From Botryllus schlosseri (Eukaryota), in NCBI GenBank assembly GCA_051294905.1, contig CM119375.1:3782001-3846000 (forward strand): 64,000 bases of DNA, given 5' to 3'. Every line of letters starts with the position of its first letter. Position 1 is the stretch's first letter. Below are positions 25,501 through 49,500 of this stretch, piece after piece. A model generated the notes under the pieces. The model made no database searches, was not told the DNA's origin, and worked only from the letters and a program-made list of their open reading frames with translations. Both the position numbers and the translations under genes were made by a program.

Positions 25501-28500
25501 TCTGAGTTGTTTTTATTAAAACTTTATGCCCCGGAATAAAAAAAATAGGCATGCAAAAGAGCAACCATAATAATTATTGATAAAATACAACAATGAGCCT
25601 GAAAGAAGCTTACAGGAAAGCCGTTAAGATTTCGGGCAAAGCGTTTGATAGTAGCTGCTCAAGAATGGGTGTGCCACCGACCATAGAACGGCGAGAAGAC
25701 TAGTAATCACATAATCACGGCTCTTGATTGGCTAATCGGCTATGCTTCAATGATCACAGCAGCAGCAGCTTGCTGATTAGGTGTTCAAGGAGTCTGCTAC
25801 CGGCGGGGGTTCTGCAAGCGCATTGTTGGTAGGTTCGCAGATGATGATTTAAGATTTATTCAGGACATGTTGAGGTAAGAAATACATGATGAACAAACAA
25901 CAGCTGCTTCACAAACCCTTTTACAGCATGAGTGCTTTATTGTGAAGGAAGCGGCTGTAGCCTACACGCCGTGTGTTATCGAGGAAAAGCAAAGGCGCTT
26001 ATGCAAGGGGTGAACGAATTCCCCGTACATGCTTGATGATTATCGGATCTAACCTGTCACTGTCATATTTGCCGTGACTTGGTCCGCCCCGCATTTGCAT
26101 GTGTATTGTCCCACGTCAGACTTCGATATTGCTTTAACGATTAAAGATCTCTGCTTGCCAGTAGCTATTATTTCATACTTGTTGTCTCCGTTCTGAATTT
26201 CCGTGTCACCGAAAAACCACTGCACCACTCCTGACAGCCTGAAAAAGTTTGGAGTTTGAAATTGGAGTTTCATTTCATTTACGGGTAATGGGCAACTTAT
26301 GGTTGAATAACAAATCTAGACACTTAGCATCTTGCACAGGGTATAAACTGCATATGCAATATGCAGCTACAGATATAGAAGTAGCATTACTTAGTAATTG
26401 GACATGCGAACGTAGCTGTCGGTTGAAATTCCTCAGCTTCAACATCTTTTAATTTGCCAGCCAGCTTGGCTTGTGATTCCTGGATATGCAATTTGGCTTT
26501 TGTTGAAGTATTTTTCACCTTGCAGTGAATAAGAGATTCGTCTCTTTGCTACAAAATAACAGATGTTATATTTGAAAAACATAATATTCAATGATAGTGC
26601 TACTTACATTGAGATTGTTGATCGTCAAAGCCAATTTTGTCCCTTCGTGATGAAGATGGTATTTCTCTGAACTTTCAATGAGTTTATTTCCAAGAAACCA
26701 AGCGACGGCCACTGGTTTCACTGTGTCAATTTCACATTCCAAAGTGGCATTTTCACCTTCCACGCCAATGGTCTTCTGCAAAGGCTTCACGAAACATACT
26801 TCCAACTCTGAAATATGGTATACGTGTTTTCATTCATGATCATATATACAGAATTATATGTAAACTTCATATTTACAAAAATAGCTAACAAAACGTATCA
26901 GATGCCATAAAAGCTATGTCCAATTGATTAGTATATTCATATTGAAACAGACCATAATATTTTCAAAAATCGCCCGTCAGTATAGTATAGAATTGCAGAA
27001 ATCCTGTATATCATTGTCAGCCGAATATTAGAGTAATTTGTAATGCGTACCTGTCACAGTTAGGTTCATAGAGGATTGATTGTCAAATGAATCACAAGTC
27101 CATGTTGATTGATCCTCTAATGAAGCACTTGATATCCGTAGCCTTCGTATTACATCGTAGGCTTCAGGGATAAATCTGTATATGATAAGTTGTGTGCATA
27201 TCCGATAAATGATAAGAATTGTCCATTGCACCATACCTTTCATTTGCCGCTATTTCCTCTCCGTTTCGAAGCCATCTGACATTTCTGTTACTTCTACTTA
27301 CTGAGCATTCCAAAACAACTTCATCAAATTCCATACATGCGACATCATTGAGACTGCTTGCGAATGACACGGGCGGTTCTGAAAATGTTAAATATCACAT
27401 GAGCAACAAGAAACAATAAAATACTTCAATAAGTGTGAATAAAGTCCACTTGACATGCAGAGTATAATATCAAAATCAAATATAATCTTGAAACAGTTTT
27501 TCACAGCATAATGAAATTTAAAATGAATACAAACCGACCTATCACAAAAAGCTTGGCTTCTGACACTGCTTTCTTGGAAGTGAATTTGATCGCTGATGGA
27601 TCTCCCAACTTGCACCGATGCAGCTTCAAAATATGCTGCTTTCCGTTGCTGATTATCTCAACCTTTTTACCGGCTTTGAGCTTTTTGCCGTCTGCAACAG
27701 ACATGGTATTATCAATACAGCATCGCCACATAATGAAGAAAGAAAATTACCTTTATACCAAGCCAATGGTATTTCATCATAATTAGTCTCTACTTTGAAT
27801 GTAGCTGTTGTTTTTTCGATCGCCGTGATGTCTTCCAAAGGCTTGATTATCTTTACAGTATATTCTGCAATGGCAGTGTGCAAAAGTTTTTGAATAAATA
27901 AAGTTGAAGAACAACAAATTTGGTGGATTTGTCTAGATAGCAATAATATTAGAATTGTATATTACATTCATATTGGAATAAATCTAAATATTTTTGGATG
28001 GCTATAATCAGGATTCAATCTTCAGCACCAAGTAAAAGTTTTAGAGGAACTTTGTATATCAACAACCATATAACCAAATATGAAAATGTCCCAACTCAGG
28101 GTATGCCAATTGCAGTAAAATCTGATAATAGTATATTGAGTATAAGCCATCTCTTCGCCTCCATTATTCGAATTTCCTGTGCAAGTGACGTCATATTTGG
28201 TGAAACACCGGTTGATAAAGTTCTTTTCAATTCTCAGCTAGTTGCTGACGATAACCCCTGACAAGTGTCAGCCGAAAATATTGGAGTTTATTTCAATATG
28301 GATATATTATTCCGTTGCACACCTAAGTTCTGTAGCTCCGAGTGTCTCTGCAACAATAATATCTGCGACATACCTTCAACGTAAAGCATTGACGTTGACC
28401 TTTCCTCTTCTGCATGCGCAGATATCTCCGCTCTGTCATCGTCCAAAGCTGCGCTGTGAATTATCATCCAGTGCCGCTTGTCCTCTACGCCGAAAGTAAA

Positions 28501-31500
28501 ACTTTTCGATACGGCCAGCTTGGCGCCATTTTTAAACCACGAGACTTCCACGTCCGAATGAGACAATTCGATGTCGAAGCGAACTTCGTCACGTTCGATG
28601 ACTCTCTTCTCTTCTACTTCTCTCAAAAATTTGATAGGACGAGCTGTGGTAGGAGACAATGTTTTAGGCAACATTCATGAACAGCTATGTCAATTAATAC
28701 ACGGAGTACAAATAAGAGAAACAATGCAGCGTGTACAATAAAGGCCGTTGGATTGTGACACAAATATGGTTAACAATGATTAAATTAGCAACTCAGTACT
28801 ATGGTTAAATCAGATCACAGCCAATGCTAATTGGAATCCAATGTGTGTTTGAATCGTATAACTACCGTATACAAAAAGGAATTCAATGAATGAATTCAAA
28901 GTGAGGACATAATCAAACTGAAAATAAAAACAACAACGGAGAGATAGAATAAATCTTAAATCATTTCTGACCTAACCAAGATTACAGCAAAAATCTGCAC
29001 ATAAATCGGACTTAGTAGAAATTTCACCGGTGTTGGGCCATCCATATTATCTCCAGCTACCCACATCATTTCCAGTATTGGGTAATAGTGTTTTTCATTG
29101 AAAAGTCTTTGATCTATCTTGATACATGTACTATTACATACATATATACGGACTCCAACCAAAGTTGACTTTGCAGGTTTTGTAATGCCTTCATAAATTG
29201 ATGCAATAAGGAAATGTGTGATTATAGTAGCCTATTATATGCCAAATAATTATGGTAATGGTCCGTCATATGACCACATTCTCATACCAAAATGTTAGGT
29301 AGCTCAAAGCTTGTATTTAATAAAATTACCTTCGACTGTCAACTTGGCCGTGGTCCTAGCATCATCAGCATCACAGGTGTATTTTTTCTCGTCTTCAAAC
29401 GTACAACATTTGATAACCAACGCTCGTTTACATCCGTCGCAGATAATATCGTATTTTTCCGACTGGTGTATTTCAAGGCGCGCTTTGTACCAACGTACGA
29501 CGGCTGTAGGTCTTGACACCACACACTCAAATGTCACATCCGATTTTTCCTCCGTCTTCATATCTTGCAATAACGTCATGAAATCGACGGGAGGCTCGAG
29601 TACATTGAGACGTGCTGTCGAGTTTGCGTTTGACGCTATGATCTTTACTTCTCCAGTGTGTTTTGGATCTGATTTCTTGATTGTTATGCGGTGTTTACGT
29701 CCGATTGATTCAATGCTGTCATGAATAAACAGATTTAATAAGCATCGCTACCTAATAGAAATAACTCCACAAATTACTACGGTACTTAACTTTAATACCC
29801 AATTTCACCTTATATCAGAGTTGACTAAAATAGGGGCACTTTTTCAGATTTGACTGCCGCGTAACCCGAGATTTAACGTCTTTTGTGGTCTTTTTGAGTA
29901 TTTTATGATAGAAAAGAGAAAAATTTGTCAAAAAAGAGGACATTTGGACAAAGAGAGGACATGTCTTCAAAAAGGAGGACAAATCCTCCTAAATGTGGGC
30001 GAATGGTAACCCTACAAATAGGAATTTTTCACACGTATCAAAACTACTTCAATTGGAGGTAAAAATACAAGTGTCTGAAAAGCAGATCAGCAAGTGTATA
30101 AACAATAGATTTGGTATTGTAGTAGTTGGTTAAAGGCGGCTACCTTCGAAATTACAAGATGTATCTTCGCGACTAACACTAAATGACTAATAACACCGCA
30201 AATGGTAGGGTTTGTGAAAATATATTCAGCTACCATGATACAGGGGTTCATTTCGCTCCTAAATGTGATTAAAACATCTCAAAAGTACTTTCAACTATTC
30301 AAAATCCAATTCGTAAAAAACAAGCTGTGTTGTTTAAGAATTGTGGAAATGGGAGAAGACTAATAACCACTTGTGTATGTACTGCAAGAGGTCAAATCAA
30401 TATATTTGAATTAATTTGTTACTGACCAGGTCAATACATTTACATAAGAAATATAAGTAATCGGTTAATGTCCACAGGTGTAGACACAAGTCTATGAACA
30501 GGTTTACTGAACACCAACGTTGGTTTGAACTCACTTGATATTATCACCAGATGTTACATGCTCATCATTGATATACCATCTAGCATTCACGTCGTTATGC
30601 GAGATTTCACACTCGAAATTGGCCGGGTGACCTTCCAAAACCTCTAAATCTCGCAACGCTTGACGTATCTTGATACTGCGACCTGCGACAAGAAAGTATA
30701 ATAACATCAACATTGAGTTTAAGCCGTCTGAGAGCCTGGATTGCTCAAACTTTCATGCCAGTAATACAGTGATACAGTCGTTGATATACAATGTTCTTTT
30801 CAATTTTCTACTAGTTGCCAGCTACTACCCAAATATCTCAATATGTATAAATTATCCAACTCTTGAAAGTCTGTTCCTCCAAGAATCTCTCTTCAGAAAG
30901 AATAATAGGGAAATGATAAACTAGGAGTAGCATCAAAGTTGAATACAGGATACCGCATAATATTTCATAAGCCAGTCACTTACCTGACACGGTCAATACA
31001 CATTTTGTGTTATCGCCTTCACATTTGCAAGAATACACATTTTCGTCGTTATACGAAACTTTTGATAGTACAAGTTTTCTCCACTTCCCCTCTGATATAA
31101 TTTCGCAATCTTCAGACGATGGCAGTTCCTCATTTCCTTTATACCAAGCAACCTAAAAATAATTGATGTGGTTAAAGTAGTCAGCATTGCTACTCAAGCA
31201 GAAATAGAAGTAGCACCGAAAAATTTCTACTCAAATACAAAACCACTACAATGTCTGTAAAGTACTAGAGTTTCAAAAAGTAGATCCAATCGAATGTTTG
31301 CATATTTACGTTTGCATATTTTTCGACGTAATCAGTACTTGGTTACTTTCAAAATTGCAATATGGATCTTCGAACGCAAAAAGGATAATGCTGAGCGCCA
31401 GGTGAGGAAGCCATGGATGCTACTAATGAGGTCTTTGGTCTGACCCGGCTGGGGATTGAACCAGCAACCTACCGGTAAAGAAGCTTAACACTCCACCATT

Positions 31501-34500
31501 ACACTATCTTGTCGGTATTGTGTTATTTTATTTAAAAAATTGTGTAAAAATAAGTAGGTTTGGGCTACGGCAAATGAATTTACAGTAGAAATGGAAGCAA
31601 TATAAAACATTACCACATCAATAAGTGGTACAAGCATGTAGAACCTATTTAGGACTCCGAAAAAGTAAAAGTACTTTGTTACTGATCAGCTCTGCTATTA
31701 ACTCAATGTGAGTAGCAGGGATGTAATGACTCGAGTCATGACTCGACTCGAGTCAGACTCAAGTCGAGATTTTTCGGTGACTCGAGTTGACTCGGGTCAT
31801 TTTCTTAAAAATGGAAAATGACTCGACTCGACTGGAGTCAATTTCTGTATCGACTCGACTTGTACTCGAGTCGTTGCGAATGACTCAGACCAAGTCATGT
31901 GACTCGAGACTGGGTCTATACCAACACAGGCATTTCATTGTAATTTCGAAGAATGGTAAAGTTATCACACTATTATTATTTCGTCTATCAGTACTTGTAC
32001 TTGAAAACGCTACCAGAAACTGTTAAAACTGAGGAAAATTAATATATTATGAATGCAAAGCATTCGATATCACCGAGGAGAGCTGTAAAAAGTGAGTTTT
32101 ACATGACATCAACTTGGAACTGAACGCTAACAGTCAACGCAATGACTTGGACTCGGACTCGAGTCAAAACTATAAAAGTGGGATTGACCTGTGACTCGGA
32201 ACCTTGCGACTTGGTTACAACCCTGGTGAGTAGTGTGACTACAGGAGGCGCTATTATTGCGTTCATTGCAGATGGTAGCGAGAAAACAGCATTCACATTC
32301 ACAATAACGACAAACGTATGTATTAACAACAATGAAAGAGTGACAACGGACAACTTTGCAGCATGTAAATGTAAGTCTGAAAATTCATGCAACACAAACC
32401 TTTCCGTGACTCTTGCTGACTTCGCACTCAAGCTCAACAGTTTGCAATTCCAATACATTAACATCTTCCAGCTTTTTGATGAACACAACAGGAGCGTCTT
32501 TCACCGTAAGCTGCGCGGTCGTCTTGAGTTCGGCTGCCACAAACGCGAATTCAGCGGCTTCATCCGGCGTCACGTCTGATAGGATGAGAATATGCTTTGT
32601 ATCTTCGGCACGGATCTTAACAGAATCGCTTCTGGATATCTTGACTCCGTTGCGATACCATGAGCCTAAAAATGGCAGAAACAACATATTCTTATAGCAG
32701 TGAATACATATTTTTTTCTTCACCGCTGATTAGAATGCGAAAGTGCATGTAAAAGTGTATTTCTGAGTACTAAAGATGGACTCCATTATATTCAGGTTGA
32801 TTTGTTGCTATACAAACATATTTACATCGGAGTTGCATCATGAGATGCAAAATTTATGGCACAATACTGACTGATAGAGTCTCATCCAAAAATATTTAGG
32901 TTTATCTCAGTACGAACAATGAACATGAACGTACTATTCAATTGCATATTGAAATTTGTACCTCCAAGAAACTCTTTGACTGACAGAAATTAGGAGCGTG
33001 CCTTTCCAAAATACTTTTTAATTCTACTTGAGTACTTATGAAGCTGAATCTAAAATCAGTACTTAGTACTTTAGTACATTCCAACTTGTATTGAATTTTG
33101 CAGCACTGCTTTTAACTGATTAGGATTATTGACTCATAAAAGCTGAGTTGGAAATTAGTACTTCCAATAAAACTTGTACTGAATTATGCAGAGCTGCTTT
33201 AAACTAATAAGCGTCATTGACTACTAAGAAACTTCCACATTTCTGGATTACATACACAAAGGTGTATGATCTACTAAGCATTGAAATTCTCACCTCGAAC
33301 ATTCGGAACGTTCAATTCACATTCTAGCATAACGGTGTCCCCTTCCGCGGCATTCACATTGATGAGGCGTTTCGTAAAGGCAATTGGAATATTCTGCACC
33401 GTCAAAGTTGCTTTCCCCTGATAAAACAATGGTTTAAATTACAAAGTTAAGTTAGATGCTAATGTCAATGCTACCTTAAGATTTTCCGCTACGATCGATA
33501 TCTCTGAGTTATCATCCAGCGTTACGTCATTGAATTGAATTTTATGTTCACAGCCATTTGATTTGATGTCGACGGCACTCGATTGGAGTAATTTCACCCC
33601 ATTTTTGTACCACACAACTTTGACGTTTTCATGTGATAGTATACAAGCAAAGCACGCATTGTCTCCTTCCATTACAGAAACATCCTTCAGAGGTGTCGCG
33701 AATTCAATGTTACGGGCTGTAAGAAAATGAAACGATACTTCAACAATATTACATATACCAAACGAAGTATACAGACACTTTTTATATACTAGAAATCTAT
33801 GTACGATAGTTATCTGACTATGATTTTGGTGAGCTATATTTCAGCATATTACACAGTAAAGTGTAATTTTCTTTCCAGGCAGTCAACAAACAGATGTTCT
33901 AAGCTCACCAGCAATAGACATTGAAGCAACTGTCTTCACTTTTCCTGCAATACACGAATACTCGCTTTCATCCTCGTGGGTGGAATGTTTTACGATCAAA
34001 CGATGTATATTTCCTTCTCGAGAAATTTCAAACTTTCCGTTGCTCGTGATTACGGCGCCTTTTCCCCTGAAAGTGTGAATTAAAATATTATTGGAGTGAG
34101 CAATTCATAAGTATTCAGTAAGTGAAATGAATAATCTTCATTTCGTCATTTCGTCTTCATTTCAACTCAAAGCACATTTGGAAAAAATTATTAAATATAC
34201 AACTGAGAAGGGGTTCCTAATTCTAATCACATTCTGATCATACATTATGGGGTATTGAAATGCTATGGCATTCATAGAAAAGGAGTAATATATATTACGA
34301 TAACTATATGCAAGTGAACACACTCACTTAATCCATTTCACTTCCTCATTCTCGTCAGCCACCTCGCATTCGAAAACAGCATTGCCGAATTCCACGACCG
34401 ACGCATCCTCCAAATGCTTTAAAAACTTTGTGTTATCCCTAAATTGTCGTGATAATATGTCAAGACTTGTTGAGATATATGTGGCATACAATAAATATAC

Positions 34501-37500
34501 TATCAACTACTCACGTGACTTTTGTAACGGAATCAAATCCCTCAAAAACTTCTGTTGAAGTGAACATTTGTTCTGTCAATGTACCCGCTGTCGATTCAAT
34601 CCGTCTTTGCCCGACAGTGGAGCTTGCTAGCATTCTATGCGATTTAACTGCACTCGTCGAAGAAACCTTTTCCATTTCAATGTCTTGCACTGTCGCTTGT
34701 TCGTGACTGGCTTGAATCACCGATGTTGAAGTAGTTGTAGACAACACAGCTGCATGATGCAAATATCCAGTCTGATCAGTTATCTCTGCTGCTGCAATGG
34801 CTTGATAACTGAAAAAAATAAAATTGTATTGTCATTTATAACAAAAATAAATATTCCTTGATCATTTCTTTGATTATGACAGTATTCAACTTACCGAATA
34901 TTCCTATGTTAAAACATTCACAGACTGAATGAGGCTATCGACAAACAAGACAGGATAATACTGTAGAGTGTACATCATTACAATCGTAATTGAGATACGG
35001 ATAAATATTGCTCTGAAATACTCATTATTTATTACAACAACCCTTTTCTTGCCTGAGTAACTCAGAAGAATAAGTGAGAAAATTTGAATGTTCCATTGAT
35101 TACCTTTCAGATAAATTTTCTGTTTCAGCTTCTTGCAAAGCAACAGTAACTTCTTGTCGCGGATAGGCTATATCTTTATAACCGTGCTTCATCGAAGTGC
35201 CTGTCTTTGTTGCATCTCCTCCATCCTCTGATGATGTTTAGTGAGTGTGGAAAATGATATGAATGGAAGATGGGCATGGGAATACAAATATCATGAGTAA
35301 GATATGAGTACATGAGATGAAACTTGTGACTTGTGAATACGCAATGATCGAAAATATACTCAAGATGTAGCGGTAAAAATGAATTGCGATAATCGGGATT
35401 AAAATGGCCATGAAACACATACCCGGCTTAACTTTTAGCACAGCTTCATCAGCTGCTATATCATCAAAACGGACGCTATAGCTGGCAGCATCATCCAATC
35501 CACAATCCTTTGGAAACATAAAGTCGTAACTCAGTATAGAGATTTAAATCATTGATTTGAAGTAACCTTTATAGTCAAATAAAACTTTTTTTCATCCTGT
35601 TTGGTTTCATATTTATCTCCGTCAATATTGACTTTGGTTCCATTTTTGTACCAGACAGGCTCTGAAACATTTTCCGATGACGTTTCAACCACAAACGTTG
35701 CTGGTTCTCTGACCGATGTTTCGATGGGCCGCAGTTTGCAAGTAATGGCCATCAGAGTCACTGTGAACAAATGTGCAGTGAAGGTTAAGCAATGTGCTGG
35801 TCTCAATAACTGATAGCAACTGTGTGATATGACATTAACGTACCTCTGCATTTGCTGATAACATCTGGGTTGGGTCTTGCTTGGCAGCTGAATTCTCCGA
35901 TATCATCTTTTTCCATTCCGGTAATAATCAATTTATGTATCTTTCCGTCAACAACCGGTCGATACTTTGCAGTCAGATAGATTTTGTCAGACTTTTTGAA
36001 CCACGTCACGGGCACGTTCGGGTGTGAAAGCTCGCATAACAATATGGCTTCGTCTCCAATCTGGATTATGTTCAATCGAAGAAACAGGATCGAGAATTAT
36101 TTTATTGAAGCAAATATTTTGATCAAACTTATATTTTTACTATTTTCCAAGTATTATAGAGTTTTTATTTTTAATTCAACCAAACTACAAAACAAACAGA
36201 AAGCATCAATGATGATACAGAAAAATAATGCAAACACAGTATTCGCTATCGAGTAAGACTGATTGATACAACCCTTACAGGCCAGCACGTCCTATCACAC
36301 CATCATAAAAACAAGTACACTGTCTCTACATGATACAGTTGTGAAGGTGTTATCAAAAGACGGAATATCAAGAAATAGTAGCAAAGATATGAAATTGGAA
36401 TAGCTAATAGGGTAACAGTGTTAGTAAATCCTTTATAAATGCATCATACTGCATTTCTTGGATTGTTGTGGTAATTAATTCTAAACGATAGATCCTATAT
36501 GGTGCACATATAAAAATCCACGAACCGCTGGTTTTATCCAAGCTAGATCTAAATTTTATTAGACTACTGTCGTTTATTTGGAAACATCCAATTCATGCCA
36601 TTCATGTTATGATTGTCTAAATGTCTATCGTATACGATGGATCTCTCGGCTACATTACTGGGTATATTATGAAGCACTAATTAACACCTTACCTTCAATG
36701 CCACATCCATCAGTTCATTTGTGAAATGCAAACCCTCAATGGGTTTGAGGTCGATCATCTCGGATTGATCTTCGTCCTCTACCGATATATGCCGAATCTT
36801 TTTCTCAAGACGCTTAATCTCCTCTTCATCCTCAGCAGCTGAAACAATATAAGTCATTCTGCTCATCTGCATGAAACAATATTCACAAACGTTTGCTTAA
36901 TATTTACTAACCAGGAAAATTGAGTGGCTACCATATCGGTTTATCATTAGAAATTGATCATTCTCATCATTGTAAAATCGTATTAGGAACTCACGAATGA
37001 CTGTTAGCTTTCCGGACGTCTTGCTACCGTTATCCAGAGTGCAAGAGTATTCGATCTCATCTTCTGCTTTGCAGTCAAGCACTAGAAGACGTCTCATCTT
37101 TTTCATTACAAGTATCTTATATTTCTTATTCTGTCAAAAGCATTCAGCAATATGATAGACACAATTCTATTAATGAGTCATAGTGATGGATACCTTCTGT
37201 GTAATTTCAGTCTCTCCTGCAAACCATTTGACTTTGACATCGTCATTGTTAACAGTGCATTCAAAGGTGGCTGTTTTTCCTTCAATGGCTTCTTGGTCAG
37301 ATATTGGAGACAAAAATTCCAAACCTTGACATTGGATTAATTGAATCATACATAAGGCTATTCAACAATTACACACAATACAAATACCAATGAATTCATG
37401 ACACACAATTTCAAAAGTGCCATCTGCTATTGGATATTGTCTTAAAGAGGTATGCTTTCTCAATCGAATGAAAAGACAAAACTAATAACATTTAGGCTTG

Positions 37501-40500
37501 CAGCTTACGAGTACATGTGTATATTTTTTTCAATATCAAGTTATTAGCAGGATTGTAATGACTCGAGTCCAACTTGAGTCACGATTTTCTGATGACTCAA
37601 CTCGACTAGAGTCATTGTCTCAAAATACGGAAATGACTCGACTCGAGTCAATACACAGATTGTGCATGACTTGAACCAAGTTATATGACTCTAGACTCAG
37701 ACGGCCAAGACCAACATTTCATTGTAATTTCAAACAATAGTAAAGTAACCACACTATTGGGATTAGGTCTATTGGTCCAGGTACTTGAAAATGCGACCAG
37801 AAACTGCTAAAGGTGGGGAAAACTAGTATATTATATATGCGAACCATTCGATATCAAAAAACAGAGTTATATAAATTGGATTTACCAGAATTTAACTGAG
37901 AACTGATCAGTCAACATAATGACAGGGACTCGGACTCAAGTCATAATACCATGACTTGAACTCGACCCTCTGCTCGGACTTGACTCGGTGGTGAATTGAA
38001 ATTGACTCAATTTGACTCAAGTCAAAACTATAAATGTGAGTTGACTTGTGACTCAGAGCCTTGTGACTTGGTTACAACCCTGGTTATTAGTATACGGTAT
38101 CAATTGTAAAGATATTTTGAATAGTAACGTCGTGTATTTAGGGCCAGCCAGCCAGGAAAATTGATATTGGTCCAACTTTGAATTTTCATAAAGGCATGCA
38201 TTTAAGTGGTGTGTCGGTGTTTAGTTCTAAACTTACTTTTATCTGGAAAAATAACTCTTGTAAGCGTCTCAGTGTCGTCGTCGTTATCGACAATTTTGCA
38301 CTTATAAATGACACCGTTATCTTTGTCTCGGTTCGTGGCTGGTATGGTGAGCTTTCTCTTTCGGCCAGCGCTCGAGATTTTATAATTTCTCCCATGCTTC
38401 AATTTCTCGTCACCACGATACCATTCCAATCGAGCACGTTCTAACGAAGTTTCGCACTCTAATGTGAGAGCATCCCCGTCCTCTGCAGCAATCTCTTCCG
38501 GCAGTGGAGTTGTGAAGACGATAGCTAGAGTGATTCAGATGAATTCAATGATATCATGATAATTCTGATGCAGCTGAGTTCCCAAGGATCATTCTCGGCC
38601 AATGATTTTCTATTTATATTCGACATAATCTGATTGGGGGTGAATTAGGTTATACCATGTTTATATTATAGTGAATACCAATCAGGGATATATAGAACTC
38701 CGGGATGGCTGACTGCGTCAATTGCGTCATCGCGGTATTACCTAAGTGGGTCCAGATTCGCGCATTCAGTTTTGATTCACGTTACGGTCAGCCGCTTCAT
38801 CTGTGTGTAATTTTAAGTTTTTGAGAGCGGTAGAGGCATATAATATCCATGTTTATGTTATTATATAAAGCTAGAGGTTAACTAGGTTATGAGATGTTCA
38901 GGTAGTCTGAAACTTTGCGGTATTAGCCCTATTCCTTCAGCAGCAATTTACCGGTATACCGGTAAGGCCATTTACTCGCCTTCGGAATATCTCTGCTTCT
39001 GTAGTATCTCATGTAACATGATTTGCTGCGCTGATAATCGTGAGAAGATAACAAAATGTAGAATAATTTCCAACGTTAACATTGATATCCGCAGTACGAT
39101 TTTGATTACGCCTTGCGGTATGTTTTTCATTTACCGGCATGTTATGCGAATGTATGTCACTATCCAAGGCTGTACATTGCACAAGTACAAGTGTACATTT
39201 ACACTGTGCCGTGTCAACTATGAAGGCGACCGTTAGGAGGGACTTTGTCAGTTAAGATCTTGTACTATAGATTAATATGTGAATATGCAGGTATAGTGCT
39301 GGCTGCTGGTATTGCAGGCTTACCGGTATTCCAGATCATGGCTGGATTATTCCTAGTAAGAATTGGAGCCACTGAGTACACCACCGGTGTGCAAGATTCA
39401 AGAGGAATTTCAATTGAGAATAACCAAACATTTGAATCTAATACAAACACAACACAACGCGTCAAGGTCTTTGCAGTTGTGTAAGTGTCCATAGCAACTG
39501 TTGAATCCAATCTCTTGTTACAGATACTATTCATCAGTAACATGTCTGGTAAAACAAGGCAGGCATATGTTTGTTAATGAGCGGCACCTCAATGCTACAG
39601 TACTGGAATTATACTTCAACAGAAGTGCACTGTTGTGAACTACCAATGGCTGACTCCCAGTATATGGCCACAACATTTGTTGACCATTTGCTCTTACTGA
39701 GGCCATGAAGATGCCCACTCCCTTGAATGGATAAGCCAACACAATCGTCAGAACAAGAGACGACCCTGAGATACGGCCTGTCTTTACCATATAAACACTT
39801 ATAGCCTATAGGCTATAGGCCTGTACGATGGAGGAAGAGAAAACTCTGAAGATTGCTTTCAATTTGCAAGGTTTAGTCAAATCGTTGCAATAACGCATGG
39901 ACCTCTCCTCAGTCGGCCCAAGGTAAGTTTGGCTGATTCTAGTGATACGTTATTACATGAGCGATTTACATTAATCTTGATGTGGTTAAAGTAGTCTGCA
40001 TTGCTACTCAAGTAACAGTCGTATTCCCGAGCGTACTGGTATTTAAACTTCCTTAAGTAGCTGTAAAGTGAAATGCCTGCAAGGTACTCAAGTTTGGAGA
40101 TGGCTGTTTCCGAATTACAAGATGTATCTTCGAAAATAGGCAACAACTACTTGAGTACTGCAATGAAGTAGAAGTTCTTCACTACTGACCAACTCTGCAT
40201 ACATCTATATATATTCTTAAGGTTAATTTGTGTCTCTAAATACATCATTTGTTTATTTTTGTTGCAGATTCCGGAAAAACAAACGCGATGTTCCAGCATT
40301 TGCATCACGTCAACAGTGGATATCCTGATATATTATACTGGGCACATTCCATTGAAATCTTGGCAAAGATGGCCACGATTTGAATATTTGGATCTCGTGC
40401 CTCCTCACCGAGATGATTTTTTTACATGGAATCATCTATCGCTCTATCGGAAAATCTGCAAGACAATGATACTGAATATTTCTCAACTGATAAATGGCAT

Positions 40501-43500
40501 GAAATGCTTCAGGAGGCCCATTCGTGATGTACCGTTAAGCCATGGTGGCAATTTCTTCACTGCGGTCATGAAACTATTTCTCGGTGAACAAAATATCAGC
40601 TGAATTCAACAACTGGGTCTACCGAATGCTTCTTGAATTGATAATGATATGTACCAAACTTCTACCCGAGGCTACATTTGAACCTGAAGTATCAATGGTG
40701 TGTTGATTTCTTGATCAACTTTCATTGAGTGACATAGAAGCTGACAATGCTGCTATCACAATTTCGAGTCCTTACAGGCCGTGCTATCTTTTTGTTATTG
40801 GAAATGCTCCATGGCAGGGGTGCATTTAAAATAAACGGTGTTTGAAATACTATGTTTAAAATATGCTTTAAACAGTGTTTTAAACAAAGGCCTTTTGAAA
40901 AAAATTCTTCCAACGTTGTAAAATTATGCCATAATTGTGTAAATACTTTCTAAAATACGTGTTATATGAGCCTACGGACGATTACCACCCGATATAGCCG
41001 ACTAATATCGATATGGGATGGCTGGAACCCTCAAAATAGTCGGTTCAACGGCAATAGCACAGATATTTCGTCAAAGGAGCTATATTTACACTATATTTGC
41101 AATTGTCAATGTCAATCCAATATGACGTCACTATTGAATATTCTTGACGTCATGGCTTAAAAAAAGTATATTTTATATAAGGGCCTGGTTTTGAATATGT
41201 TTGTTTTAAATGCAACCCTATACTCCATGGTAATTGTCGGTTAACGCGAATTGAAACGGTTGATTTAATCAATCCTATTACCCCCCCCCCCATCCCAGCT
41301 GCAAGGTTTCCGACAATGGCTTGTAAATAGGTAGAAGACGCTGATATTATTCGTTATTCACTCTGTTATTTATGGCCTGATGCAGATTATATGATGTGTA
41401 GAAATTAAACACATTCATGATTTACTGAAATTCAGAGTTGTGATAGTTTACTTGGTTGGCTATACAGCAGTGTTGAACTTTACTAGGTTGGCTATACAGC
41501 AGTAAGGTTGTGATAATGGAAGAATGTCTAGCTTAACTAACTCTTCCGCAAAAGGTTGAGGATCGTTATTCTAGAAACAGCTGTATTGCTAGCTTGCAGA
41601 AAAGTGGATATTTCGAGGCAGATTGCAGGTAACTTTCTGGACCTACTTAGGTAATGGCCAAAATGAAGTCAGCCATCCCGGAGTTCTATATATCCCTGAT
41701 ACCAATCAACAAAATGGTTACTAATAAGAAAGGAATTTGAAGATCATGAGCATACCAATAGCTGTGCATATTATCTAGTTATTAACCAAGAAGAGTACAA
41801 TGATTGTTTCCTACGAGTGTTGATTAGGGCCTAACAAAATCAAGCTCTGAATTGAGTATTAGGCTTCAAGTCGGGTATTCGAGCATCGACACTTCGCAGA
41901 TATGTCATTTTCACTGACGTGTTTAACTTTGTACTACATATTTCATATGTTGCGATACTTCCAATCGAGATTGCAAGGCTTCTACAGTTGAAAATAGTAT
42001 CGAAACTATAATTCTCGTCGATAAATTGACCGTTATTGACAAGGAGCGTACCATTTCGGTACTTGAAAATCTTCTCTCGTGACTCGACTCGAATCAATAG
42101 ATGTGAGATGTGACTTATATTCATTATTTGTAAATTTTGCTATTATAACTTGAAAGTGATAAACATACTTGAATCAACTTTGACGTAAGCCTTTGTCTTA
42201 ATGCTAGGGTTGGATTTCAGTGCACAGCTGTATTCCCCATCATCGTTTTTGTTTAGTTCTTTGATCGTGAGACTGTACTTAGACTTGTCGTTTGTCAATT
42301 TGTACTTGGAACCGGGATACAGGCGTTTATTTCCTTTGTACCACAGTACAGTTTCTAATGGACTTCCGACTTCACAGGTAATAGTGATCGAATCTCCTTC
42401 ATTTACCAACTGGTCATCAAGTTTGACTTTGAATGCTACATGTATATTTTAATGATGTGATGAGATGAGATGATGAAAAAGAGAGAAAAAAACATGAATT
42501 ATTACCAGAAAAAGCGATTGTTGATGCTAAAAAGAACAATACAACCATATTAATTACTGTTATATATATATCTGTCAAATATGTTGACTTGACGTGAATC
42601 AGAGACCGCATGTCAATATTTTGGCAGACAAACCAGGAGAGCTTTCTGATGTTCAGAAGGCCGCTGATTTCAAATTTGGCCTTACTTTTTTTCAAATTGG
42701 CTCTAGTTTTAAAGATATAATCCATAGGGCAATTTTGATTGAAATCACATTTGAGCCTTATGTGCTAGATAAAAAAACAGCTCAGTCGTACTATAACATT
42801 AGGGAATTAAATTTAATTGTTATTTGTAAACAATCAAGACAGTTTCAAATCATAAAACAGCAGCATTATAAAATTTTAGGGGTGCTATCCCAGTTGAAGA
42901 CTGTTACATATATCATGTACACAAACCTCAACAATAGATACAAGTATTTACATAAAACAGTAGAAAAACGTTGCATTAATTCAATCAGTTTATGTCATAT
43001 TGATATATAGCAACATGTGCCATACAACACCTATTGTAGATTCAGAATGGACACAGGAATGCAATAAGCCATAATTAGAGTATAAATATTACCTTCTGGA
43101 GCATGTGTCAGTTTTGCGGCAGTCTCCACCGTTGTATGATCTTCAAGCTCCGCATGAGCGGTGATCTCGCCTTCATCCTCCATTGTGACATCATGGATTT
43201 TGATAATGTGCGTTCCTCCGGAAGCCGCGATCTCGAATTTTGGTGACGGTTGAATTTTGATTCCATTTCTGAACCAGGTCACTTTTGCATGGGGTTCAGT
43301 GACACTGCAGGAAAATTCGGCGACTTCCCCAAGTCGAACTTTTTGGTGCTTCAGTTTCTGCTTGAAATCCACTGTGAATAAGGAACAAGTCTAAATGGTA
43401 TGCGAGCTAAACTAGGGAGCTAGGAGTATATGATATATAACACAATGGCCACCCTTTGATGTAGCAGACTCCATATGCCATGACCAGGCTTACATGAGAA

Positions 43501-46500
43501 TCATCTTTCTATAGGCATTAGTCCTGAATTCTGCAGCCATTTCTTAAACTGATCAGACATAGTTATTGATGAGGCGATGAATCCCACCATGCAACATGAA
43601 TCATGGGATGGAAAGCCTAATATAGCCTAAAACTTGAATGAATGATGCTGGAATTATTTCGGAAAATTTATAATTTATAATTTAGCTCCCCTACTAACAG
43701 ATATATGTGATGTCCTATTTTTTGATGATTGTAAATATAAATATACAACAAAGATTATTGATAGAAGGTTGAATCAAAACAATAAACATCAATTATAAGA
43801 CGGAAAACCTAATCCAGCCAAAAAATTGAACGGTCCTGAGATAATGTCAGAAATTGAAAAATTTGCTCCCCATATAAAAGAAATATCTCATGCTTGCTTT
43901 TTTTATGATTGTGAAAACAGATAGACAAGCAGACACAATGTAAATGAGATGTCGGATCATGTATTTCGGTGGGTATGAGTGTTTTTCCACACCACCTACT
44001 ATAATTAAGAGCTTTCTTCTTTGGAGATGCAGCAATTGTGGATGGTTGAGAATTTGCATCCTTCGTCTGATGCGCAGAATGATACTGTTGTACCTCCAGA
44101 GTTTCAACTCTATTGGTGGCTTCAATCGGTATCACCTGGGACTGAGCAACAGCAAACTGTCTTTTGGGTCTGGTTTTGGGTACATTCTCTGACAACATCT
44201 CATTTTCTGATTTGCCTGCGACAATCAGGCTTTCAATGCCTTTTTCTGACTTGTCAGAGATAGCCGCCATGCTAGTCTTTCTTGTAACTGTTTGTTTTTC
44301 TGATGAGGTGGATTGTTTATATGAAGTGTCTTTTCTATCAAGAACAGCTTCGGAATCATCAATGGCGGTTTGTCGTTGGAAAGTAAGCTTAGTTCTCCGA
44401 GAAATACTCTTTTCGCTTCCCTGCTTTTCTGTATCCACATCTGATGTGACAGTTTTAGAGGAGTCTATACTTTCAGACTCGGATTGGAATAATTCAGTTT
44501 TTAAGGCTTTCTTCACAACAGTTTTTGTGCGGGATTGCTTCTCCTTGCTGTCGGCAGTTGAAGTTTTGTTATCTTCAGCACGCTTGCGTATTTTTACGAC
44601 TGATTCCTCTTGTGTCTGACTCACTGGGACTTTTACATCTTGAGAGGCATCTTGAGCGATTTTCGAATGACTGGATGGTTCCGTTTTATTCTTTGTTTCC
44701 GCAACTTCCTCTAACGATTTCTGTTTTCTCACTCTCTCTTTTTCTTTCTGGTCTTTGATAAATTTTTTCTGTGCCTCATGACGCTCTTTCAGCTTCTTTA
44801 TTTGCTCGGTTTCTGCATCTTTCTCAGTTTGATCAATCGGATTAAGAGAAAGATCTTTAGGCTTACTTGCAGATTCCAATTTTGCTTTCAGCGGGACTTG
44901 TGCAAGGGGTGCAGTCTCTATATTACTTGCAGCCGTTGGTTCAATCACTCGATTTCCCACTGGTTCCTTGGAATCAGTTTTAGCGATTTCAGATTTGTCG
45001 GTGACCTTCGTTTGAGTTGATGACTTGCTTGCGCGAGTTTTAACTCGTGGTTCAACCCTAATGGATTGTGAGCTTTTAGATTCATCTGATTCTATCAAGT
45101 CAGTTTTGGTGACTTCGACATCAGCCTTCTCCTTGCTTATTTGAGTTTTAGCTTGAGGTTGAACTTGTTCAGGCTTAGTAGTTTTATCTTTAGCTGGCTC
45201 ATTGAAATCAGTCTTGAAATCAGTTTTAGTGATTTCAGATTTACTGGTAACCTTCGTCTCAGCGGAGGACTTGCTTGCTTGAGTTTTAACTTGCGGTTGA
45301 ACTTCTTCCGGCTGAGCAATCTTACGTTGAGCTGGCTCCTTGAAATCAGATTTAGTGGTTTCAGATTCGCTGGTGACTTTGGTGTGAGCAGTCGACTTGC
45401 TTGCTTGAGTTTTAACATGAGGTTCAACTTTGACAGGCTGCACCTTTCTAGATTCAGAAGGCTCTTTCAATTCGGTATTTATGACTTCAGATTTGCTAGG
45501 GACTTTGGCATCAGCCAACGCCTTGCTTTCTTTAGTGTCAAATTGTGGTAAAACTGCTTCAGGCTGAGTAGTCTTAACTTCAGCTGGCGTCTTGAAATCA
45601 GTCTGAGGGATTTCAGACGACCTAGGGACCTTCGTCTGAGTAGGAGACTTGCTTGCTTGAGCTTTAACTCCTGCTTCAGCCATTGCCGGCTGATCCCTCT
45701 TAGGTTCCGTTGGTTCTTTCAAGTCGCTTTTGGTAATTTCAGGTTTGCTAGTGACTTCTAAATCAGACAAAGCCTCAACTGCTTGAGTAGCAACTCGTTG
45801 TTCAACATCTTTCGGCTGCTTGGCTGTAGGTTGAGCTGGTTCCTTGAAATGAGTTTTAGTGATTTTAGATGTGCTGGTGACCTTCATTTGTGCTGATGAC
45901 TTGCTTGCCTCAGTTTTAACCTGTGGTTCAACCTTAACAGGTTGCATACTTTTAGGCCCCGTTGGTTCTTTCAAGTCAGTTTTGGTGGTTTCAGATTTAC
46001 TGGTGATCTCCACATCAGCCAATGCCTTGCTTGATTCAGTTGCAACTTGTTGTTCGACTTCTTTAAGCTTCTTGACTTTAGGTTGAGTTGGCTCCTTGAT
46101 ATCTGTTTTTGTGATTTCAGATTCGCTACTGACCTTGACATCAACCAAAGTCTTGCTTGATTGAGTTTTTACTCCTGGTTCAACTTTGACAGGCTGCGCA
46201 CTTTTAGGTTCAGCTGGTTCTTTCAAGTCAGTTTTGGCGATTGCAGATTTGCTATCTTGCTTCCTTGCTTGAGTTTCAGCTTGTTGTTGAACATCTTTAG
46301 GCTTCTTGACTTTAGGTTCAGCTGGTTCTTTCAAGTCAGTGTTGGAGATTTCAGATTTGCTAGTGACCTCTACATCAGCCAACGCCTTGCTTGCTTGAGT
46401 TTTAACTTGTTTTTCGACTTTGATAGGCTGAAGTTCAGCTGCCTCCTTGGACTCAGTCTTAGTGATGTCAGATTTGCTAGATACATTCGTCTCAGTAGAT

Positions 46501-49500
46501 GACTTGCTTGCTTGAGTTATAACCGGTGGTTTAACCGTTGCAAGCTGATCACTTTTAGCTTCACCTGGTTGCTTCAAGTCGGTTTTAGTGATTTCAGATT
46601 TGCTCGTGACTTCCAAATCCACCTTGCCAGTTTTAGATCTAACTTCATCAGGCTGCTTGACTTTAGGTTGAGTTGGTTCATTGAAGTCAGTTTTCGTGAT
46701 TACAGAATCACTAGTCACCTTGACATCAGCCTTGCTTGCTTGAGTTTTAACTCGAGGTTGAACTAATTCAGACTGAGTAGTCTTAACATCACCTGACTCT
46801 TTGAAATCCATCTTAGGGATTTCAGATTTGCTGGTAATCTTTGTGTGAGTAGAGGATTTCATCGCCTGAGTTTTACCTTGTGGTTCAACCTTGACAGGCT
46901 GCACACTTTTCGCTTCAGTTGGTTCTTTCATATCAGTTTCAGTGATTGCAGACTTGCTAGTGCCCTCCGCAGTAGCCTGCTTGCTTGCTTTAGGTGCAAC
47001 TTGTTGTTCAACTTCTTTAGGTTGGATAATTTTAGGTTCAGCTGGTTCTTCTTGTAAGGCAGTTTTTGTGGTTTCAGATTTGCTAGTGACCAACGCTTCT
47101 GGTGTTTCGTGTTGCTCTGTTTCAACATCAGATTTTGCTGCATCAGTTTTACCCTCAACTGGTGTAACCATCTCTGGTTTTATATGTTCTGCTTCAGGAC
47201 TCTCAGCAGTTTTTTGTCTCTCCAAAACTTCATCTTCAAATGATAGTCTCTTGCCGACACTTTGGCTGGCAAGTCTTCCTTTCCTGTCACCGGGCTTCTT
47301 CATAATTGATTTTAGCTTAGGCTCGGGGACCGGTGTAACATTCTCGATTACAATTTTCGGGTGTCCGAGATCTTCAACTTTTTCAGTAGGGACAGAAACA
47401 GTGTCCGATTTTGAGGTTAGAATTCTAGTTTTAGCCGTTTTCTTAGCAACTGTACGTCCATCTGCAACATCGTCACCTCGGGTTTCTGTAATTTTATCAT
47501 TGTTTTTTGGAAAGTCAAACACTTGAAGAAACAATAGGATATCAAAGCGTCAAGAAATGCAGTAGGACTCAAAGATATTGCATAAGGTAAAATTCGTTCA
47601 ACGAAAAACATACCTGATATGACTTTCAGGTTAGCAGTGGAAGAATGAGGTCCGGCTACGATGCGATATGAGCTCGCATCCGAATCATCCACGTTTTTGA
47701 CAGTGAGAGAATACTTGTCACCATCTTTCACGATATGATATTTGTCACTTGGTGACAACTTTTCATTTCCCTTATACCTGGTAAGACCACAATATCGTTT
47801 TCAGTATCAGATCCCTGTCATGCAATCAATTACTGATATTGTTGTGTTTAACTATTAGTTCCAAGTCAATAACGTAATGAAGGTGTAATTCACCAACAAG
47901 ATTCAGCAACTAACCAATTGACTTCCGCTTCAGGAACATAGATCTCTAGCTCGGTCTCGAAGACTGCTGATTTCCCATGCCCCACCGATACGTCCTCAAT
48001 ATCCTTGATTACCTTGACGGTTTCTGACAAGGATATGCTTCTTTGCATGAATTTAAACAAAGCAGAGACGTCGGCCGCTTCTGAACTGGCCGACTTGCCC
48101 TCTTTCTGCGGAAAGAGAAGAAATGCTTGAAATATTCTACGGATATGATACATAAAATAGATAGTATTAACTATTCTTTTCAAAATTACACATTTGTTTT
48201 CTATTTATCCATCTGTTCATAGATTAAGCTTCGTGGAGCAACGGATAAATTGAACTATATAACACAGGGGTTTCAAATATTTTTTACACCGTGGCCGCCT
48301 TTGAAACATTTAAAAATCACTGACCTTTTCTAGTTCATCAACCTCTAGAAAAGTTAGGAAACGCTATTTTACTCATATAAATGGTTTAAACGGCACTGTT
48401 GAACAAAAAAATACATTGAGACTTGCACACTCCTTTGTCGCGCAGATATGTAAAACTAACCTTGAGATACTTGTTGCGCAAATTAATTATTGATATCAAT
48501 AAGTCTTAGAGAAAATAAATTCAAAATAAAGATGTGCCTTTTTGCTTTACTGATATGTATATTGAATTTTAATTATTTTCTTATCTTGTAGTTGATGTAC
48601 ACATAAACATGACAAATTTCTTTATTTCCCCGAAGTAGGGAACCCCTCATGTAACACTACATCTGCAAAAATGGACGTAAGTACCTTCCACAGCAACACA
48701 CTTACCGATGAGTCACGCCATTCCTGGAACCTCGACAGAAGTTGTCTGTAATCTGTAATGCCGTAGTTCCTTGCATATTTCTCATATTCCTTCGGATCAA
48801 CTTCTTGCATGAGTTCATACAATCTTTTCAATTCCTCTTCCTTAGAGATACTTTCACGACGAGGTGTTCTGAAATGGATTACATAAATGGAATTCTTCCT
48901 GAATAGGTAGCCTACCTAGTGGGATAATACTTTTTCAAGGCAGACTTGTCGACTTTTTCCACGACTTTATCTGTGACTTCGATATTGAATTGCACGTCGG
49001 CTTGGCCGTGCTTGTTTTTGGCTACGCACCTGTCGATGTAAAGCTTGTCAATGAAAAGATGATTAGCATGATGAAACAAACACTCAGAACAAGACAATCA
49101 TCGATAGAAACGAGCAGATTGAGTATTATACGGTAGTTCACGGACTCGTACAAACTACTCCTGGAACTAGAACTGGAACTGCTCACTTTTCAAAAGTCGC
49201 AACTAGAACTACTCATTGTCAAAATCCGCTAATAGAACTAAAACTCCTAAAAAATTTGAGAACGACTGATGTAGATTGTAGGCAGGCCTACTGATTGATG
49301 TGATATCACCATTTTGTGTGTTCATGACTTCAAATCACATTAGGCTCATCTGAACTGGTTTACATAATAGAGAGTATGCCATATAATATCGAAATAATGA
49401 TTGAAGACCAGGACAATCTTTTTACCTGTAGCTTCCTTTATCCGGCTTGTCAAGTTCAGTTATTTGTAACTTATGAATTGGACTGCCGTCTTCGTGAATT

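What the first reader, a model, noticed from the sequence alone, without database searches (positions are those of the whole stretch)
44000..47521. Single giant skippable exon of 42-aa repeats directly after the I81-like Ig, in place of a classical PEVK segment
Seen: 3522-nt exon, phase 1 at both ends, so the I81 exon (ends 47614) could splice directly to the Ig exon at 43371. It holds about 18 units of 42 aa rich in K/E/S/T/Q/P, with no 28-aa PPAK motif. Established: vertebrate PEVK follows I83 and is built from many small exons. Inference: this may be an independently evolved entropic spring acting as an all-or-none stiffness switch, placed inside N2A if the next Ig (WFRNG...DEGEITAHAELE) is the I82/I83 orthologue.
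Basis: partly seen in the sequence, partly recalled or inferred. Interest (0 to 1): 0.7.

Follow-up and report, generated by a model that had tools for sequence, protein, structure and literature searches.

The report
Repeat-built spring exon in sea-squirt titin
One 3.5-kb expressed exon of a sea-squirt-type titin gene encodes 18 copies of a floppy 42-residue repeat at the spot where vertebrate titin carries its PEVK spring, so it is most likely this animal's own version of that spring, but nothing shows it is switched in and out by splicing.

Summary
Spliced RNA contigs from two studies join 47614 to 47485, not 47521, and one joins 44000 to 43371. The real exon is 47485..44000 on the minus strand: 3486 nt, phase 1 at both ends.

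It encodes 18 tandem 42-aa units (47102..44937) flanked by unique sequence. It has no Cys or Trp, 41% P+E+V+K and 22% S+T. It matches no Pfam family, and the whole genome has no PPAK motif. AlphaFold and charge/hydropathy both indicate disorder, apart from one 49-residue charged helix.

The context is firm. The exons just upstream are specific orthologues of human titin UN2A and I81. About 24 Ig domains and then the first Fn3 follow. The exon therefore sits in the PEVK position.

Two parts of the reading are not supported. No skipping junction was seen, both sampled transcriptomes include the exon, and a symmetric phase only permits skipping. The next Ig matches I81, I82 and I83 equally weakly, so "inside N2A" is unresolved. 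"Independently evolved" is plausible but untestable here, because the protein databases returned nothing and hold not even this species' own fragments.

Verdict: a lineage-specific variant of the titin spring, moderately interesting.

The parts
44000..47485 (-). The expressed giant exon: 3486 nt, phase 1 at both ends, 1161 full codons.
   Evidence: RNA contig joints 47614|47485 (X12, X1) and 44000|43371 (X1), with CT..AC ends that read GT..AG on the minus strand. No joint lies inside the exon. Sequence read.
47486..47521 (-). Use of the upstream AG at 47522 is not seen.
47103..47483 (-). N-terminal unique part, exon residues 1-127. Charged and predicted disordered by charge/hydropathy.
44937..47102 (-). 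Array of 18 tandem 42-aa units with an 84-aa super-repeat. Consensus: xADxKVTSKSEITKTDxKEPxEPKxxQPxxVEPQVKTQASKS. Each unit has an S/T/K-rich half and a P/E/V/K-rich half.
   Evidence: AlphaFold pLDDT 58, pTM 0.12, almost no secondary structure (one 4-residue helical turn)
44001..44936 (-). C-terminal unique part, exon residues 850-1161. Non-repetitive and mostly low-confidence coil.
44685..44831 (-). Predicted 49-residue charged (E/K/R-rich) helix, exon residues 885-933.
   Evidence: AlphaFold block-mean pLDDT 86-96, H36-84 of the 312-aa segment; sequence
47614..47777 (-). Upstream exon: C-terminal half of the I81 orthologue.
   Evidence: About 55% identity and 48.6-51.8 bits to human titin I81 (7AHS domain 1, 5JOE). 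RNA joints; the tool gives the upper edge as 47775 with the cut possible 2 bases further, at 47777, which puts the AG just before the exon.
48706..48867 (-). UN2A-orthologous helical exon (Pfam THB).
   Evidence: PDB 7NIP titin 44.5 bits against MyBP-C 22-29 bits; Pfam PF18362 E 4.8e-9
43093..43371 (-). First Ig exon after the giant exon: I-set, 279 nt, phase 1-1. Orthology to I82/I83 is unresolved.
42165..42435 (-). Second Ig exon after the giant exon.
20300..43371 (-). Tandem Ig segment of about 22-24 domains that follows the giant exon. The first Fn3 lies in the open frame 18174..18542.

Best explanation
The exon encodes a roughly 1160-residue, largely disordered extensible segment of I-band titin. 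It lies between the conserved N2A anchor (UN2A-I81) and the tandem Ig segment that leads into the A-band. Under stretch it would straighten as an entropic (worm-like-chain) spring, adding up to about 440 nm of contour length, about 270 nm of it from the 18 units. That is the job PEVK does in vertebrates. The array grew by duplication of an 84-aa double unit and is now old and under weak purifying selection. In the transcriptomes sampled it is included, so I read it as a regular, probably constitutive, part of the muscle isoform.

Shown: exon borders, expression and inclusion, the repeat structure, the position in the gene, and the absence of PPAK motifs.
Inferred: disorder (in silico only), elasticity, and constitutive inclusion (two runs, tissue unknown).
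For: Spliced RNA contigs from two studies carry the exon with both borders and give zero depth in the flanking introns. There are 18 in-register 42-aa units. The exon has no Cys or Trp, 34% charged residues, and hydropathy below the Uversky boundary in all three parts. AlphaFold on a double unit with the other units as alignment gives pLDDT 58, pTM 0.12 and almost no secondary structure; the C-terminal part is coil except for one helix. Upstream lie specific UN2A and I81 orthologues. Downstream lie about 24 Ig and then Fn3. No other PEVK-like stretch occurs in the window plus 140 kb upstream, and the genome has no PPAK hit. Among the SNPs listed between the reference and the RNA contigs, the exon has 14 synonymous and 20 non-synonymous, against 5 and 0 in the next Ig exon; the one indel seen adds 6 nt in frame. 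Between units pS is 0.48 and pN 0.33.
Against: No mechanical or biophysical data exist. Disorder is only predicted, and the alignment given to AlphaFold was shallow. Tissue and stage of the two RNA runs are unknown, and contig assemblies drop rare isoforms. Two raw-read RNA runs gave almost no coverage. Conservation in other species could not be tested: three protein-database searches returned nothing, not even fragments from this species.
Confidence: 0.62

Rival explanations
1. Regulated cassette exon. The exon is included in some muscles (heart, body wall, larval tail) and skipped whole in others, switching titin between a compliant and a stiff form.
For: Phase 1-1 gives an in-frame 47614->43371 product. 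The acceptor in use has a poor pyrimidine tract, aaaattacag, which is common in regulated exons. Vertebrate titin tunes stiffness by splicing PEVK and Ig exons (PMC6469411).
Against: No skip joint appears in two transcriptomes that carry the neighbouring exons. Contig depth over the exon is equal to or higher than over its neighbours. A symmetric phase is also found in the neighbouring Ig exon, so it is no specific sign.
Confidence: 0.15
2. The array is mainly a multivalent docking or regulatory scaffold. The 18 conserved motifs (VTSKSEITKTD, KEPxEPK, KTQASK) would bind a thin-filament or signalling partner, or serve as phosphorylation sites that tune stiffness. Elasticity would be secondary.
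For: Motifs within the units are kept across old duplicates: aa identity 44%, pS > pN. S+T makes up 22%, concentrated in one half of each unit. Vertebrate PEVK and N2A are known binding and phosphorylation hubs (PMC8553726).
Against: No known domain or motif family matches. S/T-x-x-D/E sites are not enriched over shuffles: 31 against 26 +/- 4. Non-synonymous polymorphism is high in the exon's non-repeat C-terminal part, where all the listed SNPs lie. A docking role would not exclude a spring role.
Confidence: 0.13
3. The segment is the direct but unrecognisably diverged descendant of the ancestral olfactorean PEVK: same locus, with repeat turnover and loss of introns. It would then not be an independent invention.
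For: It has the same position relative to UN2A-I81 and the distal Ig run. The central 18 residues of each unit are 60% P/E/V/K.
Against: No PPAK match even at E<=1. The period differs (42 against about 28 aa). It is one exon against 113 annotated in human (PMC6469411). If the next Igs are I82/I83, the positions differ by two domains. This rival concerns origin only and is compatible with the best explanation for function.
Confidence: 0.3

Closest known systems
Vertebrate titin PEVK segment
   Same: It lies between the N2A element and the distal tandem Ig segment. It is a low-complexity tandem repeat predicted to be disordered. Its length falls within the range that, from my memory, PEVK isoforms span. 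It starts and ends in phase 1.
   Different: P+E+V+K is 41% against about 70%. S+T is 22%. The period is 42/84 aa, not 26-28. There is no PPAK (PF02818) match. It is one 3486-nt exon against 113 annotated exons in human. It follows I81 directly, not I83.
Disordered tandem-repeat springs of invertebrate titin-like proteins: C. elegans TTN-1 PEVT and other repeats, crayfish I-connectin PEVK-like and SEK repeats, Drosophila Sallimus PEVK. Recalled from Flaherty 2002, Forbes 2010, Fukuzawa 2001 and Machado & Andrew 2000, not re-read here; these proteins are named as I-band counterparts in PMC12198301.
   Same: Lineage-specific charged repeat arrays, as I recall encoded in large exons, within the I-band part of a titin-family protein, with compositions that depart from strict PEVK.
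   Different: Here the array sits in a chordate titin that keeps vertebrate-type UN2A and I81. Sequence relationship to those repeats was not tested, because no sequences were available through the tools.
Titin N2B/N2A unique-sequence springs
   Same: Non-repetitive disordered sequence flanked by Ig domains that extends under load. The exon's 127-residue N-terminal and 312-residue C-terminal unique parts resemble this class.
   Different: There is no sequence similarity, and most of the exon is a regular repeat array.

Membership tests
Vertebrate-type PEVK (PPAK/polyE) segment | About 70% Pro+Glu+Val+Lys | tested here: not met
   41% over the exon and 43.5% over the repeats. With Ala added it reaches 49%, below the 0.54 per-exon threshold of PEVK_Finder (PMC6469411).
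Vertebrate-type PEVK (PPAK/polyE) segment | 26-28-residue PPAK motifs (Pfam PF02818) | tested here: not met
   No Pfam hit in the exon at E<=1. No PF02818 hit in six frames of the whole genome.
Vertebrate-type PEVK (PPAK/polyE) segment | Built from many short exons | tested here: not met
   A single 3486-nt exon with no internal RNA joints.
Vertebrate-type PEVK (PPAK/polyE) segment | Located between N2A and the distal tandem Ig segment | tested here: met
   UN2A and I81 orthologues lie upstream. About 24 Ig and then Fn3 lie downstream. It starts after I81, not I83.
Vertebrate-type PEVK (PPAK/polyE) segment | Intrinsically disordered entropic spring | tested here: inconclusive
   In silico results agree with disorder. 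Mechanics cannot be tested with these tools.
Titin N2A element | UN2A helical unique sequence | tested here: met
   44.5 bits to titin 7NIP against 22-29 bits to MyBP-C; Pfam THB above its cut-off.
Titin N2A element | I81 immediately after UN2A | tested here: met
   48.6-51.8 bits and about 55% identity to I81, against 15.8 (I83) and 0.1 (I82).
Titin N2A element | I82 and I83 following I81 | tested here: inconclusive
   The next Ig scores 29.4, 30.4 and 33.3 bits against I81, I82 and I83. Igs further downstream score similarly per residue.
Alternatively spliced cassette exon | Length a multiple of three, with the same phase at both ends | tested here: met
   3486 nt, phase 1-1.
Alternatively spliced cassette exon | Both inclusion and skipping junctions observed in RNA | tested here: inconclusive
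   Only inclusion junctions appear in two contig-level transcriptomes. The raw-read runs were uninformative, and the reads tool allowed a single call.

The most novel reading that the evidence does not exclude
In the tunicate lineage the titin spring next to the conserved N2A anchor was replaced, or built from scratch, by an unrelated bipartite 42-aa repeat. The repeat is encoded in one exon inserted between I81 and the I82/I83-type Igs, and the exon is spliced in or out as a whole to set muscle stiffness. This would be a one-exon stiffness switch, and a natural case showing that the spring's sequence is free to change while its anchor is not.
Probability: 0.12. Interest if true: 0.65.

Novelty: new variant of a known kind. 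Interest (0 to 1): 0.42.

Why it matters
Titin's PEVK spring sets the passive stiffness of vertebrate muscle, but its origin is obscure. This locus shows a chordate outside the vertebrates (other agents' notes call the genome an ascidian) that keeps the vertebrate N2A anchor at 55% identity or more (UN2A and I81). Next to that anchor it carries a spring of quite different sequence, period and gene structure. That gives a natural comparison for asking which properties of the spring matter (length, charge, proline content, phosphorylatable residues) and which are historical accident. It also supplies a compact, single-exon, repeat-defined construct for single-molecule mechanics. No open paper describing the spring region of tunicate titin was found. 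The one paper on Ciona connectin (Hanashima 2012) could not be read.

Tried and rejected
1. Homologue searches. The whole exon against 1.84 billion cluster representatives gave 0 hits. The whole exon and a 327-aa repeat piece against the 5.8-billion-cluster database gave 0 hits. Fragments from this species are not found either, so these blanks say nothing about other tunicates.
2. ESM Atlas. The best score was 0.79, to bacterial low-complexity proteins, which is meaningless.
3. Raw-read RNA runs. X20 gave 18 partial reads and X24 gave none, so there are no junction counts. The reads tools are single-use, so tissue-specific splicing could not be pursued.
4. Assigning the next Ig to I82 or I83 by best PDB hit. 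The scores do not discriminate. A proper tree needs the full set of human I-band Igs, which no tool supplied, and I did not type sequences by hand.
5. CK2-type S/T-x-x-D/E enrichment in the units. Not enriched.
6. A second copy of the repeat. None elsewhere in the genome.
7. Classical PEVK elsewhere in the gene. None in the window or in 140 kb upstream.
8. Read-through of the donor at 44000. It would add 64 residues before a stop, but depth is zero at 43700-43899, so there is no sign of it.
Full report
**1. What is there**

The region lies in a minus-strand gene made of Ig and Fn3 exons. A 1241-aa open frame spans 43809..47534. Purine excess on the coding strand is marked across 44000-47500 only (AT skew about -0.3 on the plus strand).

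The upstream exon ends ...aaagtcatatcag|gtatgt at 47614. The donor after 44000 is ...aattata|gtaggt. The next exon starts at 43371 after ttattcacag.

**2. Exon borders from RNA**

I laid two raw-read RNA runs and two Logan contig sets on 42100-48099. The contig sets X12 and X1 come from different studies. They are RNA: they carry intron-less joints with GT..AG ends on the minus strand and have zero depth in the introns. The joints are:

- 47913(47915)|47775(47777)
- 47614|47485, in both runs
- 44000|43371, in X1
- 43093|42435, in both runs

This removes 12 codons, keeps the frame and keeps phase 1 at both ends.

The exon is 3486 nt. No joint falls inside it, and no 47614->43371 joint was seen. 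Contig depth over the exon (about 8-12) is equal to or higher than over most flanking exons (about 3-11). Contig depth is a crude measure, and contigs drop rare forms. The two raw-read runs gave 18 partial reads and none, so they do not bear on splicing.

**3. The repeat**

- TRF reports periods of 126 and 252 nt at 66-74% matches.
- Protein autocorrelation peaks at lags 42, 84, 126 and 168. Identity at lag 42 is 31%, against about 14-18% at the other listed lags.
- An HMM built from twelve units finds 18 units over exon residues 128-849, window 47102..44937. Four are truncated and one carries a 4-residue internal duplication.
- Double units align at 42-62% identity to the first row.
- The consensus is xADxKVTSKSEITKTDxKEPxEPKxxQPxxVEPQVKTQASKS.
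- The unit is bipartite. Positions 18-35 are 60% P/E/V/K and 8% S/T. The rest is about 32% S/T.
- Twelve full-length units average 64% nucleotide and 44% residue identity, with pS 0.48 above pN 0.33. The duplications are old, and the peptide is under moderate constraint.
- The repeat occurs nowhere else in the 495.5-Mb genome.

**4. Physical character**

The exon has no Cys, no Trp and only 16 aromatic residues in 1161. It is 34% charged with a near-zero net charge. Mean hydropathy lies below the Uversky boundary in the N-terminal, repeat and C-terminal parts. No Pfam family matches.

AlphaFold was run on a double unit with the other eight double units as its alignment. It gave pLDDT 58, pTM 0.12 and almost no secondary structure, only one 4-residue helical turn.

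For the 312 C-terminal residues, the only confident element is a 49-residue E/K/R-rich helix: exon residues 885-933, window 44831..44685, block-mean pLDDT 86-96. Two short helices of about 50 pLDDT are also drawn, and the rest is coil.

Fully extended at 0.38 nm per residue, the exon would span about 440 nm, and the array alone about 270 nm.

Among the SNPs listed between the reference and the RNA contigs, the exon has 14 synonymous and 20 non-synonymous changes. All of them lie in its non-repeat C-terminal part. The next Ig exon has 5 synonymous and 0 non-synonymous. The only indel adds 6 nt in all, keeping the frame. This is the pattern expected of a translated but loosely constrained disordered segment.

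**5. Position in titin**

| Element | Window coordinates | Evidence |
|---|---|---|
| C-terminal half of the Ig just upstream | 47776..47615 | 48.6-51.8 bits and about 55% identity to human titin I81 (7AHS domain 1, 5JOE); 15.8 bits to I83, 0.1 to I82 |
| Exon before that Ig | 48867..48706 | 44.5 bits to titin UN2A helix (PDB 7NIP); 22-29 bits to MyBP-C; Pfam THB above cut-off |
| Downstream Ig run | 43371 to about 20300 | About 22-24 Ig domains by a locally built Ig profile |
| First Fn3 | open frame 18174..18542 | Pfam |

The order is therefore UN2A - I81 - giant exon - tandem Ig - Ig/Fn3. The vertebrate order is UN2A - I81-I83 - PEVK - distal Ig - A-band (PMC8553726; PMC12241362).

No PEVK-like 22-residue window exists on either strand of the window, or on the minus strand of a further 140 kb upstream, except inside this exon. 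Pfam PPAK finds nothing in the whole genome. The exon is thus the positional counterpart of PEVK without being a PPAK-type PEVK.

**6. Is it inside N2A?**

The Ig after the exon (43371..43093) scores 29.4, 30.4 and 33.3 bits against I81, I82 and I83, at about 28-31% identity. The following Ig scores 91 bits in total on the I81-I83 chain but scores better on I65-I70. Two Igs 10-14 kb further downstream give 65-70 bits for 70-74 residues, nearly the same per residue.

Nothing here resembles the sharp one-to-one signal seen for I81. The count of about 24 Igs would fit I82+I83 plus 22 distal Igs, but that is weak evidence. I leave this point open.

**7. Is it a switch?**

Skipping would keep the frame (g|tg = Val). 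The neighbouring 279-nt Ig exon is also phase 1-1, so a symmetric phase permits skipping but does not indicate it. The used acceptor has a weak pyrimidine tract, which is at most suggestive. Every junction observed is an inclusion junction. The claim is untested in the tissues that matter, and so far nothing supports it.

**8. Origin and species**

Notes by other agents on this genome call it an ascidian. I did not test that. The high SNP density (about 2-4% between the reference and the RNA contigs) and the close UN2A/I81 matches are compatible with it.

Cross-species comparison failed. Three large protein searches returned nothing, not even fragments from this species, so the blanks are uninformative.

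The open literature held here says only that urochordate connectin has an I-band elastic region and an A-band region (PMC12198301). It has no paper on a tunicate titin spring. The Ciona connectin paper (Hanashima 2012) is not held, so prior description there cannot be excluded.

**9. Verdict**

The best reading is a lineage-specific, disordered tandem-repeat spring at the PEVK position of a tunicate-type titin, included in the transcripts sampled. It is a new variant of a known kind. Repeat springs that depart from PEVK are known from nematode, crustacean and insect titin-like proteins (from my own knowledge). The switch idea and the 'inside N2A' placement remain hypotheses.

Noticed in passing
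window 48706-48867 (-): This exon is a specific orthologue of the human titin UN2A helical element: PDB 7NIP 44.5 bits, with the 23-residue core VDPKEYEKYAR-YGITD-R-LL differing at only three positions. It also hits Pfam THB, the MyBP-C M-domain tri-helix bundle. This ties titin N2A to the C1-M-C2 region of MyBP-C.
   Followed up: partly
window 44685-44831 (-): A 49-residue E/K/R-rich helix predicted with high confidence inside the otherwise disordered exon. It may be a single-alpha-helix (ER/K) element in series with the repeat spring.
   Followed up: partly
window 46618-46621: The RNA contig of run X12 carries three small insertions here (CGG, A, CG) that add 6 nt in all and keep the frame. 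This is a length polymorphism at the boundary between repeat units 4 and 5.
   Followed up: no
window 42165 and 38520-38524 (-): The RNA contigs run from ...aagtat at 42165 straight into cgtcttcac... at 38520. The reference has tag|ctat before that sequence and no GT directly after aag, so this junction does not fit GT-AG in the reference allele. The cause may be a polymorphism or a non-canonical site.
   Followed up: partly
window 43346-43519: A 174-nt contig in run X1 crosses the acceptor at 43371 unspliced, from pre-mRNA or a trace of DNA. The X12 contig breaks exactly at 43371.
   Followed up: no
window 18174-20700 (-): The switch from tandem Ig to Ig/Fn3 lies inside this window (the I-band/A-band junction). 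The whole distal Ig segment, about 24 domains, can therefore be read here.
   Followed up: partly
window 59654-63289 (-), and 69142-79878 (-) on the window's coordinate scale continued past its end (loci L002, L008): Two further giant open exons of 1212 and 3579 residues lie upstream in the same gene. They are S/T/D-rich with P+E+V+K of only 22-30% and are unrelated to the 42-aa repeat. The gene carries several large non-PEVK unique segments.
   Followed up: no
window 42100-48099: SNP density between the reference and the RNA contigs is about 2-4% (for example 41 differences in 1077 nt), which points to a very polymorphic species.
   Followed up: no
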